From positions 20,770,001 through 20,834,000 of the forward strand of contig NC_135250.1 in NCBI RefSeq assembly GCF_964204865.1: a stretch of 64,000 bases of DNA. Reading direction: 5' to 3'. This stretch comes from Styela clava. Lineage: Eukaryota. Positions 14,301 through 17,031 of the stretch are shown piece after piece; the stretch's first letter is position 1; every line of letters begins with the position of its first letter. The notes under the pieces were generated by a model. That model saw only the letters and a program-made list of their open reading frames with translations, was not told the origin of the DNA and did not search any database. The translations under genes and the position numbers were made by a program.

Positions 14301-17031
14301 GTTGGCATATTGAAGTTTGATATTTTAAATTGAAGTTGTATTTTATGCTTATTTATTTCTGATTGGTAGAAAAAGAAAAGTTCATTTCTAAATACTTTTT
14401 CTGAAATTCTTGGTAAGTTTACATTTTTATTCGTTTTACCGTAAGCACACGATGCTCCTTTCCAACCCGAGTCACACATACATTGACTTCCGCCACGGCA
14501 ATCCCCATGCCCGGTGCATCTTATCTTACATAGTCTGAGTAAAATAAAAATTCGAATTGAAATTACATTCCCATGAACCGATTACAAATATCCAACTGAT
14601 GAGAAACAATGCGCGGCTCGTTCGAACTATTTTTGTTTCTTTTAACTGACAATCCACAAAAACTGTGCCACGGCGGAAAATTAAAGCAATTCAATGGATT
14701 TCAACTACAACTATAGTATAAAATATGAAATAATACTGTTCAAAATCTTTCAAAAAGTTTTATAAAATATGTTACTTAAATTATAAAATAAACTTACTGG
14801 TTTAGCCTGTAAAAAAAATCAAAGAGAAATATTGTTAGTAAAATGTTCTGGAAGCAACAAATCAATTAATTCATGTGTGTTCATCGTTTTTATTTGCCAT
14901 AATATACTACAAATTTTAGGAAGAATAAATGAAGAATATAGGAAGAATAAAGATTACCCTCGGTGCGACATTACTATATACTAGGAACTTTACGCTTTCT
15001 GAAATTTTGTTTGTCAAATTAGTTTGAAATGAAAATGGCGAACTATTTCATAAAAGACATAAATGATCTTAGACTATTTTTTTGGTTCACTTTATTGTAA
15101 GTTAGAATTTGAAATTTAACTTAAATAACTATCTACAGCATAGTATGTTTTACATTGAAAATGACTGCAAAAGCAAACTAGAGCTAAAATAAATTAAAAC
15201 AACTGTATCTTCAAATTTATTACATAAAAATAATCATGTAGAATAAATTCTGAAAGTGGTTTTTACTCACGCAAAATTTGAAACACTGAAAGAGTAGAAA
15301 TAATTTATTATTAAGTGATTATTAACAAAGTAGATGCTGTTTAATATTCTGTCTTCTTTTAATATGTAAAATCAGTATAAATACAATTAAGGAGATATGA
15401 AAATATTGCTTTTTCAGATTTGGATAATTCAAACGGCTCACAGTAGATATGTGAAATTCGAGGAAAATTGTGCTGAATACTGTTCTGCGGTTTGGTTCTG
15501 GAATACCGATTCTTAATTTTAACTTTGTTTTATGCTGATGTAAACCAACGTCCGCTGCATCACAACAAAACCTAATTATTGCTGTACTATTATTTTATCA
15601 ATGATGCCTTATGTATATTTAAGAAAAGAGAAAAGACATAAAACATCAATTTGAAATCATATGAAACTGTATTCTCATTTACACAGTCAATTCTAGGATA
15701 CCAAAAAAGTAAAAATATTAAATACTGAAATCTCATAGAAATTAGGTTCCAAAACTCCATCAGACATTTTCAGGCATAACAGACTTTTCAATAATGAATG
15801 ATTTTGTTATGTGAAGTATCAGCCATTATTTTACCATTATTTAGAATATGAAACTTACGCTGTCACACTGTAAAAAATAACAAAAGATAATTTTAGTCAG
15901 TAAAATATTTGAAAGTGAAATTCATTAAATTTATATGTGTTGTAGCTTTTTTATTTGGTTCAATGTCACAAACTTTTTTTCATTTCATGCGAAATTTTGT
16001 AGGTATGACCTCAGTTTACTACAAATTGAAATGAAAGGAAGGTTGATTGATAGATTTTGTATTAATCAGCATAAATGATATCTTCAATTCAAAAATGCTA
16101 TGCTATACATGACTTGACATCTAAAAATTAGCTAAAATACATATTATGTTACTGAAACATGATGAAAATTACTTTCCAGAGTTACATGGCAATTGCAGAC
16201 ATTTTAATTAATATATGTATTTGACTTTTTTTTTCGGTAGTTGTAAAAAGTCCAATTTTATTTCGTTGAAACATGGTTCCAGATTTTGCAGTTCCTCATG
16301 GGAAGACATAAAACCTATAAAATCCAAGTCCGAATGTTAAACAGAAAAATGTGTACTCACGCTTTCTTTGCGCTGAAGAAATAGAACATAAAATGGAAAC
16401 AATTACATATAGGGACACGCCTGTCCAGGAAATCGGACAAAAAGATAAATCACTTAGGATAAGCCATTGGTTTATATTATTCCTCTAAAATCTCAAAAAT
16501 GTTTCATAAAACTTTCCCATCCAGATTTTACTGTTCTTTATGGGAAGACATAAAGCCTATAAAAATCCAAGTCCGAATGTTAAACAGAAAAATATGTACT
16601 CACAGTGTCGCGACGCTGAAGAAATATAGGACATAAAATAGAAACAATTAGGAAATTGAACAGAAGGATACAAACAGAACAGATACAAACAGAAAGATAC
16701 AAAGCCCTACAAATCACAAAAATATTTGCTGAAACTTCTCGTAGTTTTCATTTAATTCCAAGGGGATTGCGTTTGGAGTGAATATATATATATATATATA
16801 TACATAATATTCACCCTTCACTTAGACCGTATTTTCGGATTGGAATTAATTAGATCCATATTGCATGGTTTCGTAGAATTTTTAATGTTCTTACTTCTCT
16901 AATGAGACTGATATTATTAAATAGAATACAATTAAATACAAAATAATATCATCTTACAACCACGCGTCAGACTGATCCACATGCATCGACAAGATGACGA
17001 CGAGCACGGTTAAAATCAATATTGCTTTCAT
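2227..17031 (-). CDS. Secreted multi-EGF protein gene: signal peptide, microexon-encoded helix, 17 EGF modules, Cys-rich module, thyroglobulin type-1 domain, Cys-rich module; final exon downstream of 2227 unresolved
   Basis: Exons read with GT-AG and consistent phase: 16958-17031; microexons 16604-16615, 16361-16372, 15859-15867, 15271-15285, 14798-14806; EGF 14440-14534; cbEGF 13123-13245, 12679-12801, 11773-11895, 11333-11455, 10663-10785, 10202-10324, 9765-9881, 9022-9135, 8547-8663, 8037-8153, 7468-7590; EGF 7165-7260, 5883-5973; cbEGF 5282-5412, 4998-5117, 4028-4150; then 3260-3427, 2475-2651, 2227-2388. Confidence 0.85.
2475..2651 (-). CDS. Thyroglobulin type-1 domain exon
   Basis: PC...[32 protein letters not shown]...C matches the Tg1 consensus (C..G.Y...QC....CWCV...G..I.GT). 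Confidence 0.88.
3260..3427 (-). CDS. Cys-rich module copy 1 (correct frame is absent from the ORF track)
   Basis: Phase-1 reading [56 protein letters not shown]; ttttag acceptor, G|gtgtgg donor. Confidence 0.85.
4028..7260 (-). CDS. Two plain EGF modules followed by three cbEGF modules (exons 7165-7260, 5883-5973, 5282-5412, 4998-5117, 4028-4150)
   Basis: [31 protein letters not shown]; [33 protein letters not shown]; [11 protein letters not shown]...; [11 protein letters not shown]...; [12 protein letters not shown]...; splice phases are consistent. Confidence 0.9.
6248..7044 (-). mobile_element. Non-autonomous hAT (Charlie/Buster-like) element, copy A
   Basis: TIRs cagtggtcgacaaact / agtttgccgacccctc; imperfect 8-bp TSD ccgtatgt/ccacatgt; transposase C-terminal remnant [11 protein letters not shown]; homologous to 60470-61261. 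Confidence 0.85.
7468..13245 (-). CDS. Run of 11 single-exon calcium-binding EGF modules (phase 1-1, 114-123 nt each)
   Basis: Each exon begins D-x-[DN]-E-C and contains C-x-N-x-x-G-x-[FY]-x-C-x-C, e.g. [41 protein letters not shown] and [41 protein letters not shown]. Confidence 0.92.
12035..12057 (-). pseudogene. Truncated cbEGF exon remnant DVNECIL*
   Basis: Same ~280 nt upstream intron and acceptor as 13918-14200, but only the first codons of the exon survive. Confidence 0.7.
13820..13917 (-). pseudogene. Decayed cbEGF exon (or alternative terminal exon) ending in a stop codon
   Basis: ttgcaattag|[32 protein letters not shown]; sixth Cys and donor are missing. Confidence 0.7.
14440..14534 (-). 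CDS. First EGF exon (tenascin-like EGF) [31 protein letters not shown]
   Basis: ttttactcag acceptor, G|gtaaaa donor; six-Cys EGF with CxCxxGWxGxxC. Confidence 0.85.
14798..14806 (-). CDS. Microexon 5 (9 nt, gctaaacca; LNQ)
   Basis: poly-T tract acag|gctaaacca|gtaagttt; phase 2-2; joins the phase-2 acceptor of the first EGF exon. Confidence 0.75.
15271..15285 (-). CDS. Microexon 4 (15 nt, tgtttcaaattttgc; VSNFA)
   Basis: ttctactctttcag|tgtttcaaattttgc|gtgagtaa; phase 2-2. Confidence 0.75.
15859..15867 (-). CDS. Microexon 3 (9 nt, tgtgacagc; VTA)
   Basis: ttattttttacag|tgtgacagc|gtaagttt; phase 2-2. Confidence 0.75.
16361..16372 (-). CDS. Microexon 2 (12 nt, cgcaaagaaagc; AKKA)
   Basis: tatttcttcag|cgcaaagaaagc|gtgagtac; phase 2-2. 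Confidence 0.75.
16604..16615 (-). CDS. Microexon 1 (12 nt, cgtcgcgacact; VATL)
   Basis: tatttcttcag|cgtcgcgacact|gtgagtac; phase 2-2, in frame with the signal exon. Confidence 0.75.
16958..17031 (-). CDS. First coding exon: signal peptide [24 protein letters not shown], phase-2 donor
   Basis: ATG in caaaaatATG context; basic n-region, hydrophobic core and S-x-A cleavage motif; donor TT|gtaaga. Confidence 0.85.

What the first reader, a model, noticed from the sequence alone, without database searches (positions are those of the whole stretch)
14534..16959. All 32 microexon skip combinations are in frame and stop-free because introns split codons at the wobble position
The donor-side dinucleotides are TT, CT, GC, GC, GC and CA, and the acceptor-side first bases are C, C, T, T, G and A. 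Every possible junction codon is TTN, CTN, GCN or CAN, so none is a stop, and four of the six (CTN, GCN) are four-fold degenerate, so the junction residue does not depend on the partner exon. Inference: the layout tolerates free combinatorial splicing that changes helix length, charge (the AKKA exon) and register.
Basis: partly seen in the sequence, partly recalled or inferred. Interest (0 to 1): 0.75.

Follow-up and report, generated by a model that had tools for sequence, protein, structure and literature searches.

The report
Always-included microexon run in sea-squirt gene
Five tiny coding exons (9 to 15 bases) sit between the signal-peptide exon and the first EGF domain of a large secreted sea-squirt protein; any of them could be skipped without breaking the reading frame, but the RNA assemblies I could see contain all five together, so this looks like an ordinary by-product of exon duplication.

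Summary
On the minus strand a signal-peptide exon (17031-16958) is followed by five microexons of 12, 12, 9, 15 and 9 nt and an EGF exon (14534-14440). All introns are phase 2. All 21 possible donor/acceptor pairings give sense codons, so all 32 skip combinations stay open.

The property is not remarkable:
- Being stop-free is expected by chance: 61% of random sets of six phase-2 junction codons also pass.
- Equal phase and 3n length are what tandem duplication of a symmetric exon gives. The flanks of E2 and E3 are clear duplicates.
- The gene's cbEGF exons have the same tolerance.

The inferred combinatorial splicing is not seen:
- Contigs of three runs from two studies carry all five microexons, as exactly 57 letters between E1 and E7 or as their readable sequence.
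- The public protein XP_039274779.1 (Styela clava "fibrillin-2-like isoform X2", 818 aa) holds all five.
- Contigs cannot exclude rare isoforms.

This is not a schistosome-type micro-exon gene: the microexons encode 19-20 of 818 residues.

Earlier notes of this scan report similar tandem microexon runs in other genes of this genome (GATM, an NLR); I did not test those.

The parts
16958..17077 (-). Exon 1. At least 46 nt of 5' UTR (a contig starts at 17077), ATG at 17031, 24 codons of signal peptide ([24 protein letters not shown]), then TT. Donor gtaaga.
   Evidence: Sequence. Contig record 9 of X3 covers 17077-16958. tblastn of P0066 residues 1-24 gives 96% identity.
16604..16615 (-). Microexon E2, 12 nt, phase 2-2. 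Encodes VAT plus split codons. Acceptor ttcag, donor gtgagt.
   Evidence: Included in P0066. Counted in the 57 letters.
16361..16372 (-). Microexon E3, 12 nt, phase 2-2. Encodes AKK. It is a tandem duplicate of the E2 unit (period about 243 nt).
   Evidence: (D1, D2, D5). Included in P0066.
15859..15867 (-). Microexon E4, 9 nt, phase 2-2. Encodes VT.
   Evidence: Its first 6 letters are read in the loose end of the X8 contig. Included in P0066.
15271..15285 (-). Microexon E5, 15 nt, phase 2-2. Encodes VSNF. No flank similarity to the other units.
   Evidence: Read in full in the X8 loose end. Included in P0066.
14798..14806 (-). Microexon E6, 9 nt, phase 2-2. Encodes LN. Its upstream flank resembles that of E4.
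   Evidence: (D3). Read in full in the X8 loose end. Included in P0066.
14440..14534 (-). Exon 7, 95 nt, enters in phase 2 and leaves in phase 1. Six-cysteine EGF domain of the teneurin type. Spliced on to the cbEGF exon that starts at 13245.
   Evidence: Pfam PF23106, E 7.7e-07. Contigs of X1, X3 and X8 cover it. The 52-letter loose end at 14440 matches 13216-13245 exactly.
16278..16650 (-). Two tandem copies of an intron-microexon-intron unit holding E3 and E2. The flanks are alike and the exons are unlike (5 of 12 bases the same).
   Evidence: (downstream flank z 38.7, upstream z 11.5, 0 of 300 shuffles reach the score).
1611..13246 (-). Rest of the same gene: about 15 cbEGF/EGF exons, then a Cys-rich module, a thyroglobulin type-1 domain and a second Cys-rich module. 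The whole product is 818 aa in the public isoform.
   Evidence: tblastn of P0066 on the window. Pfam EGF_CA and Thyroglobulin_1. Open segments.

Best explanation
The five microexons are ordinary coding exons that are always, or nearly always, included. Together they encode a 19-20-residue stretch rich in Ala, Val and Thr. This stretch lies between the signal peptide and the first EGF domain of an 818-aa secreted multi-cbEGF / thyroglobulin-1 protein of the sea squirt Styela clava. Shown: the exon borders, the all-inclusive mRNA form, the gene's extent, and the E2/E3 duplication. Inferred: the cassette grew by tandem duplication of a short symmetric phase-2 exon unit. A duplicate can survive in a working gene only if it is 3n long and keeps the phase, so uniform phase and frame tolerance follow from the origin and need not be selected for splicing freedom. 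The absence of stop codons at new junctions is what chance gives, because only TA or TG donors could make a stop. The peptide most likely acts as an N-terminal spacer, or as a short helix in front of the EGF array, in a single form.
For: The exon model and all 21 junction codons come. RNA-derived contigs show the following. X1 (one contig) and X3 (one contig running from 17077 through E1, 57 letters and E7 into the next exon) join 16958 to 14534 with exactly 57 letters between. The X8 contig, from another study, reads the reverse complement of E6, E5 and the start of E4 next to 14534. No other junction at these sites was reported in the 4 runs laid. The public protein P0066 = XP_039274779.1 holds all five microexon peptides at residues 25-44, and E7 starts at residue 45. 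Duplication: E2/E3 flanks score z 38.7 and z 11.5 with 0 of 300 shuffles as high, and the E4/E6 upstream flank scores z 13.8. Chance level of being stop-free is 0.611; four or more of six four-fold donors has p 0.16. Splice signals are strong: five of five microexon donors are GTRAGT and pyrimidine tracts are 70-85%. Only these five AG..GTRAG 3n candidates with a pyrimidine tract exist in the 2.4 kb. The same tolerance holds elsewhere in the gene: 13 cbEGF acceptors read ag|AT or ag|AC, and every cbEGF junction in P0066 is Asp.
Against: The runs are kept as contigs, which drop rare variants and give no isoform ratios, and only three runs show the spliced gene. Their tissues and conditions are unknown to me. 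The public name 'isoform X2' means an isoform X1 exists; I could not see it (searches did not return it), so I cannot exclude that it differs in the cassette. More likely it differs in two cbEGF exons that X2 leaves out. E5 shows no flank similarity to the other units, and the E4/E6 similarity sits in a T-rich tract, so serial duplication is proven for one pair only. The E2 and E3 exons differ far more than their flanks (7 of 12 against 30 of 151 columns, Fisher p 0.006). That points to selection on the peptide, which a mere spacer does not explain.
Confidence: 0.7

Rival explanations
1. The cassette is alternatively spliced. One or several microexons are skipped in particular tissues, stages or after immune challenge. 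This would give N-terminal variants of different length and charge, as in the 5' mini-exons of fast skeletal troponin T or in schistosome micro-exon genes.
For: Every skip is in frame and stop-free. The 5' exons 4-8 of TNNT3 are alternatively spliced and of one phase class (abstract of PMC2447309). Symmetric microexons in MEGs are read as favouring alternative splicing (PMC4671649, passage seen). At least two RefSeq isoforms exist for this gene (name). The fast divergence of E2 against E3 shows the peptide is under some selection.
Against: Three of three runs with spliced contigs show only the all-inclusive form, as unbroken contigs across the whole cassette, and no contig with another junction was reported. 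The one public protein found has all five. Splice signals are uniformly strong. Frame tolerance has a simpler cause, duplication, and being stop-free is at chance level.
Confidence: 0.2
2. The locus is a schistosome-type micro-exon gene (MEG-like system): a small secreted variable peptide built mostly from microexons.
For: A 5' exon encodes the signal peptide and is followed by symmetric microexons under 36 bp. This matches two features in the description of MEGs (PMC4671649).
Against: The microexons are 57 of about 2457 coding nucleotides. The product is an 818-aa multi-EGF protein, not a peptide of about 10 kDa. The 3' flanking exon is spliced on to about 20 further exons. The cassette and E1 are single copy in the genome, with no gene family found by DNA search. 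The animal is a tunicate, not a flatworm.
Confidence: 0.03
3. The microexons are a chance alignment of AG and GT sites in one long intron, and the mRNA joins E1 directly to E7.
For: None found. An E1-to-E7 junction would be in frame (TTA).
Against: Contigs carry exactly 57 extra letters between E1 and E7. In X8 these letters read as E6, E5 and E4. P0066 holds the peptides.
Confidence: 0.01

Closest known systems
5' mini-exon cassette of fast skeletal troponin T (TNNT3 exons 4-8)
   Same: A run of five very short exons near the 5' end of the coding region, all of one phase class, so any subset keeps the frame. The authors also read the phase class as a sign of exon shuffling or duplication (abstract of PMC2447309). 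That these exons give 32 combinations is my recollection of Breitbart et al. 1985 (Cell 41:67), which I saw only as an entry in that paper's reference list.
   Different: In TNNT3 alternative inclusion is documented. Here only the all-inclusive form was seen. The protein here is secreted and extracellular, not a muscle thin-filament protein, and there is no sequence kinship.
Schistosome micro-exon genes (MEGs)
   Same: The signal peptide is in a longer 5' exon, followed by symmetric microexons under 36 bp. An amphipathic helix has been proposed for some MEG products (PMC4671649; PMC10526429).
   Different: MEG coding regions consist mostly of microexons and give small proteins with many splice variants. 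Here the microexons are about 2% of an 818-aa multi-EGF protein, the gene is single copy, the animal is a tunicate, and no variants were seen.
Phase 1-1 EGF-module exons of extracellular matrix genes (exon shuffling and duplication)
   Same: The same gene's cbEGF exons are also symmetric and of one phase, and their junction residue is always Asp whatever the partner. One two-exon unit was recently duplicated in tandem. The microexon cassette follows the same logic at a smaller scale.
   Different: The cassette is phase 2-2, its exons are 9-15 nt and encode no domain, and its duplicated exons diverged faster than their introns. The duplicated cbEGF exons are more conserved (92-93%) than their introns (79-89%).
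Fibrillin / LTBP family (the RefSeq name of the product is 'fibrillin-2-like')
   Same: Long arrays of calcium-binding EGF domains (Pfam PF07645).
   Different: No TB (8-Cys, PF00683) domain is in the precomputed Pfam list of P0066. The C-terminus instead has a thyroglobulin type-1 domain between two Cys-rich modules. A Ciona protein shares this ending (P0158, 39% identity) but not the N-terminal cassette.

Membership tests
Schistosome-type micro-exon gene (MEG) | Signal peptide encoded mostly or wholly by a longer 5' exon (PMC4671649) | tested here: met
   E1 encodes MK + a hydrophobic core + a polar end, 24 codons. The signal peptide is judged by eye; no predictor was run.
Schistosome-type micro-exon gene (MEG) | [quoted passage not shown] | tested here: not met
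   The microexons are 57 nt of an 818-codon coding region. E7 is spliced on to many further EGF exons.
Schistosome-type micro-exon gene (MEG) | Microexons symmetric (length divisible by 3) | tested here: met
   5 of 5 (12, 12, 9, 15, 9 nt).
Schistosome-type micro-exon gene (MEG) | Small secreted product (about 10 kDa) with splice variants from exon skipping | tested here: not met
   The product is 818 aa. Only the all-inclusive form appears in contigs of 3 runs. Rare variants are not excluded.
Troponin-T-type combinatorial mini-exon cassette | Run of short 5' exons of one phase class | tested here: met
   Five consecutive phase 2-2 exons.
Troponin-T-type combinatorial mini-exon cassette | Alternative inclusion of the exons seen in mRNA | tested here: inconclusive
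   No skip form in the contigs of X1, X3 and X8 or in P0066. But contigs drop rare variants, raw reads were not available, and isoform X1 was not seen.
Tandem exon duplication | Similarity of the introns flanking the exon copies | tested here: met
   E2/E3: downstream flank z 38.7, upstream z 11.5, 0 of 300 shuffles as high. E4/E6: upstream z 13.8 only, in a T-rich tract. E5: none.
Fibrillin / LTBP | TB (8-cysteine, PF00683) domains among the cbEGF arrays | tested here: not met
   PF00683 is absent from the precomputed Pfam list of P0066, while true fibrillins in the same table carry it. I did not run Pfam on the whole of P0066 myself.
Calcium-binding EGF repeat protein | Repeated EGF_CA (PF07645) domains above the curated cut-off | tested here: met
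   34.4, 44.4 and 31.7 bits against a cut-off of 27 on the three exons tested.

The most novel reading that the evidence does not exclude
The cassette is a regulated variability module. In some tissue (for example blood cells) or after challenge, the five microexons would be skipped in many combinations, giving a secreted EGF-array protein with up to 32 N-terminal peptides. The unusually fast divergence of the duplicated 12-nt exons inside well-kept introns would be the trace of selection for peptide diversity. Unchecked notes of this scan report similar cassettes in an NLR gene and in GATM of the same genome. If those hold, this would point to a genome-wide way of making short variable peptides in a tunicate.
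Probability: 0.08. Interest if true: 0.6.

Novelty: new member of a known kind. Interest (0 to 1): 0.2.

Why it matters
As it stands, it matters little. The finding shows how a row of tiny exons can be born by duplication and be spliced faithfully, and it warns that "every skip is in frame" is not evidence of alternative splicing. The same holds for every array of same-phase duplicated exons, including this gene's own EGF exons. The exons are already in a public gene model. It would become interesting only if raw reads or amplicons showed real combinatorial use. It would also gain interest if the fast divergence of duplicated microexons inside conserved introns proved to be a general feature of this genome.

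Tried and rejected
Paralogue search. DNA of the E2/E3 unit and of E1 finds only its own place in the 377-Mb genome. E7 as a protein finds only weak EGF exons elsewhere, with E 0.065 or worse. So there is no gene family and no retro-copy that could explain the joined contigs.

Search for short translated transcript fragments. I searched the 5.8-billion-protein collection with the open frame around E7. No candidate was found.

Search for other isoforms or orthologues with the same N-terminus. Residues 1-80 of P0066 find only P0066 itself among 37 candidates. Residues 76-818 find 4593 cbEGF proteins, none above 41% identity over more than half the query, and no isoform X1.

Comparison with Ciona. 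The Ciona protein P0158 shares the C-terminal modules but its annotated N-terminus does not align. That model's N-terminus may be incomplete, so this says little.

Amphipathic helix. The hydrophobic moment is z 0.98 against shuffles. The AlphaFold2 single-sequence model is poor, with mean pLDDT 35. Both are inconclusive.

Taxon guessing. I tried a protein-atlas look-up and two lineage-marker Pfam families (PF08034, PF14830). All were uninformative, and made them unnecessary.

Hidden extra cassette exons in the introns. None were found.

cbEGF exon finder. My crude finder placed many donors too early. I use only its acceptor sides.

Literature. 'Styela' + 'microexon' gives 0 papers, and a wider five-term search showed nothing on this gene among the 15 listed. 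Of PMC2447309 only the abstract and the reference list were readable. I saw passages of PMC4671649 and PMC10526429. Supplements were not opened.

Joined model. Exons were read one by one. The only full-length sequence used was the stored public protein P0066.
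Full report
WHAT IS THERE. The window is AT-rich animal DNA with 28-37% G+C. On the minus strand, exon E1 runs from an ATG at 17031 to 16958. It encodes 24 codons of a typical signal peptide and ends with the two bases TT.

Five microexons follow:
- E2, 16615-16604, 12 nt, peptide VAT.
- E3, 16372-16361, 12 nt, peptide AKK.
- E4, 15867-15859, 9 nt, peptide VT.
- E5, 15285-15271, 15 nt, peptide VSNF.
- E6, 14806-14798, 9 nt, peptide LN.

Exon E7 (14534-14440) encodes a six-cysteine EGF domain that Pfam places with the teneurin-type EGF (PF23106, E 7.7e-07). 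The six introns are 342, 231, 493, 573, 464 and 263 nt long. All are GT..AG and all are phase 2.

CHECK OF THE OBSERVATION. I checked each exon's inner codons and all 21 donor-to-later-acceptor codons. None is a stop, so all 32 subsets are open. The junction residue is Phe or Leu after E1, always Leu after E2, always Ala after E3, E4 and E5, and Gln after E6.

ARE THE EXONS REAL? Yes. The look-up of sequencing runs listed 11 coded runs of one organism. I laid four of them, X1, X2, X3 and X8, on 14050-17150. All are kept as contigs.
- X1 has a contig that joins 16958 to 14534 with exactly 57 letters between, which is the sum of the five microexons.
- X3 has one 324-letter contig running from 17077 through E1, 57 letters and the whole of E7, then 52 letters further.
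- X8, from another study, has a 210-letter contig with E7 in the middle. Its loose end next to 14534 reads the reverse complement of E6, E5 and the first six bases of E4.
- X2 shows only unspliced pieces.

The 52-letter loose end at 14440 (in X3 and X8) matches 13216-13245 exactly. So E7 is spliced to a calcium-binding EGF exon that starts at 13245. The joined form cannot come from DNA in this assembly, because E1 and the cassette are single copy.

THE GENE. A phmmer search with E7 alone against 1.84 billion representative proteins gave mostly generic EGF arrays. One protein, P0066, matched at its residues 45-75, which is where E7 falls if all five microexons are included. Its sequence begins with the E1 peptide (one Met/Val difference), then all five microexon peptides with the predicted junction residues, then E7. 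Its source names it XP_039274779.1, "fibrillin-2-like isoform X2 [Styela clava]", 818 aa.

tblastn places it on the window from 17031 down to 1611. The domain order is one EGF, about 15 cbEGF/EGF exons, a Cys-rich module, a thyroglobulin type-1 domain (Pfam) and a second Cys-rich module. No TB domain is listed for it, so it is fibrillin-like in name only. A Ciona protein (P0158) shares the cbEGF array and the C-terminal modules at 39% identity, but its annotated N-terminus does not align.

IS THE PROPERTY MORE THAN CHANCE?
- Stop codons. A stop at a phase-2 junction needs a TA or TG donor. Drawing six junction codons at random from this gene's own codon usage (290 codons, which is Cys-rich and so biased towards TG), 61% of sets are stop-free in all 21 pairings. 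Four or more four-fold donors occur in 16% of sets. So "stop-free" and "four of six degenerate" are unremarkable.
- Phase and length. Five of five exons of length 3n in one phase would be rare for independent exons, but these are not independent. The flanks of E2 and E3 are clear tandem duplicates with a period of about 243 nt. The downstream flank scores z 38.7 and the upstream flank z 11.5, with 0 of 300 shuffles as high.
- Other pairs. The upstream flanks of E4 and E6 are alike (z 13.8), though in a T-rich tract, so this is weaker. E5 has no detectable kin.
- Why duplication explains it. A duplicated exon survives in a working gene only if it is symmetric, so frame tolerance follows from the way the cassette grew.
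- The rest of the gene. The cbEGF exons show the same tolerance. All 13 acceptors I could place read ag|AT or ag|AC, and every cbEGF junction in P0066 is Asp. A 1.35-kb unit of two cbEGF exons has recently been duplicated.

IS THERE COMBINATORIAL SPLICING? I found no sign of it.
- Three of the three runs with spliced contigs show the all-inclusive form in contigs that run unbroken across the cassette.
- The tool reported no other joint at these sites, and no loose end that would mark another junction.
- The public protein has all five microexons.
- All five microexon donors are GTRAGT and the acceptors have 70-85% pyrimidine tracts.
- In the 2.4 kb there are no other AG..GTRAG candidates of 3n length with a pyrimidine tract apart from these five, leaving aside a longer variant that shares the E3 donor.

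There are limits to this. Contigs drop rare variants and give no ratios. I do not know the tissues. I had one read-laying run and no raw reads. P0066 leaves out the two cbEGF exons at about 12801 and 11895. So the X1/X2 difference probably lies there, but that is inference.

THE PEPTIDE. Residues 24-45 of P0066 are rich in Ala, Val and Thr and hold two Lys. The helical hydrophobic moment (0.25) is reached by 17% of shuffles. The best 18-residue window reaches 0.40. The single-sequence AlphaFold2 model is poor (mean pLDDT 35) and draws a helix over residues 20-47 at pLDDT about 50. A helix is possible. A designed amphipathic register is not shown. By the -3/-1 rule, which I recall and did not compute, the signal peptide could be cut after Ser-Asp-Ala. 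That would put the microexon peptide at the mature N-terminus.

COMPARISON WITH KNOWN SYSTEMS. The closest analogue in logic is the 5' cassette of fast skeletal troponin T. [quoted passage not shown]

Schistosome micro-exon genes share the signal-peptide exon and the symmetric microexons. They are defined by a coding region made mostly of microexons and by small products (PMC4671649; PMC10526429). This gene fails both, so it is not a MEG.

No paper in the held library combines 'Styela' with 'microexon'.

Earlier notes of this scan report tandem microexon cassettes in other Styela clava genes (GATM, an NLR). I did not test them, and they are leads only.

VERDICT. The cassette is best read as a constitutively spliced product of tandem microexon duplication, and it is already present in a public gene model. 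Interest is low. The one odd point is that the E2 and E3 exons differ at 7 of 12 bases while 151 aligned flank columns differ at 30 (Fisher p 0.006). That is the subject of a separate finding.

Noticed in passing
window 16278-16650: The duplicated 12-nt microexons E2 and E3 differ at 7 of 12 bases, while their aligned intron flanks differ at 30 of 151 columns (Fisher p 0.006). The exon has changed faster than the intron, the reverse of the pattern in the duplicated cbEGF exons of the same gene.
   Followed up: partly
window 11138-13294: A tandem duplication of about 1.35 kb carries two cbEGF exons (exons 92-93% identical, introns 79-89%). The public isoform X2 (P0066) uses the exons at 13246-13124 and 11456-11334 and leaves out the ones at about 12801 and 11895. 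This could be real exon skipping, a haplotype difference or a model artefact.
   Followed up: partly
window 13823-13981 (minus strand): A decayed EGF-like exon remnant begins like a cbEGF exon (DINKC...), lacks the last cysteine and runs into a stop. The RNA contigs splice from 14440 straight to 13245 and skip it.
   Followed up: partly
window 14917-14938: At an 11-nt tandem repeat in the E5-E6 intron, contigs of X1, X2 and X8 carry 65 letters where the assembly has 20. This is a length polymorphism or an assembly collapse.
   Followed up: no
window 2177-3443 (minus strand): Two copies of a Cys-rich module (no Pfam match at E 0.01 or better) flank the thyroglobulin type-1 domain at the C-terminus of this same gene. 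The module is shared with a Ciona protein (P0158) and an amphioxus protein (P0212).
   Followed up: partly
window 17235-64000 (minus strand): The upstream neighbours are Ig / fibronectin-3 / kinase exons of a giant muscle-kinase-type gene, with an MLCK-like kinase at about 43800-45700. They are not part of this finding.
   Followed up: no
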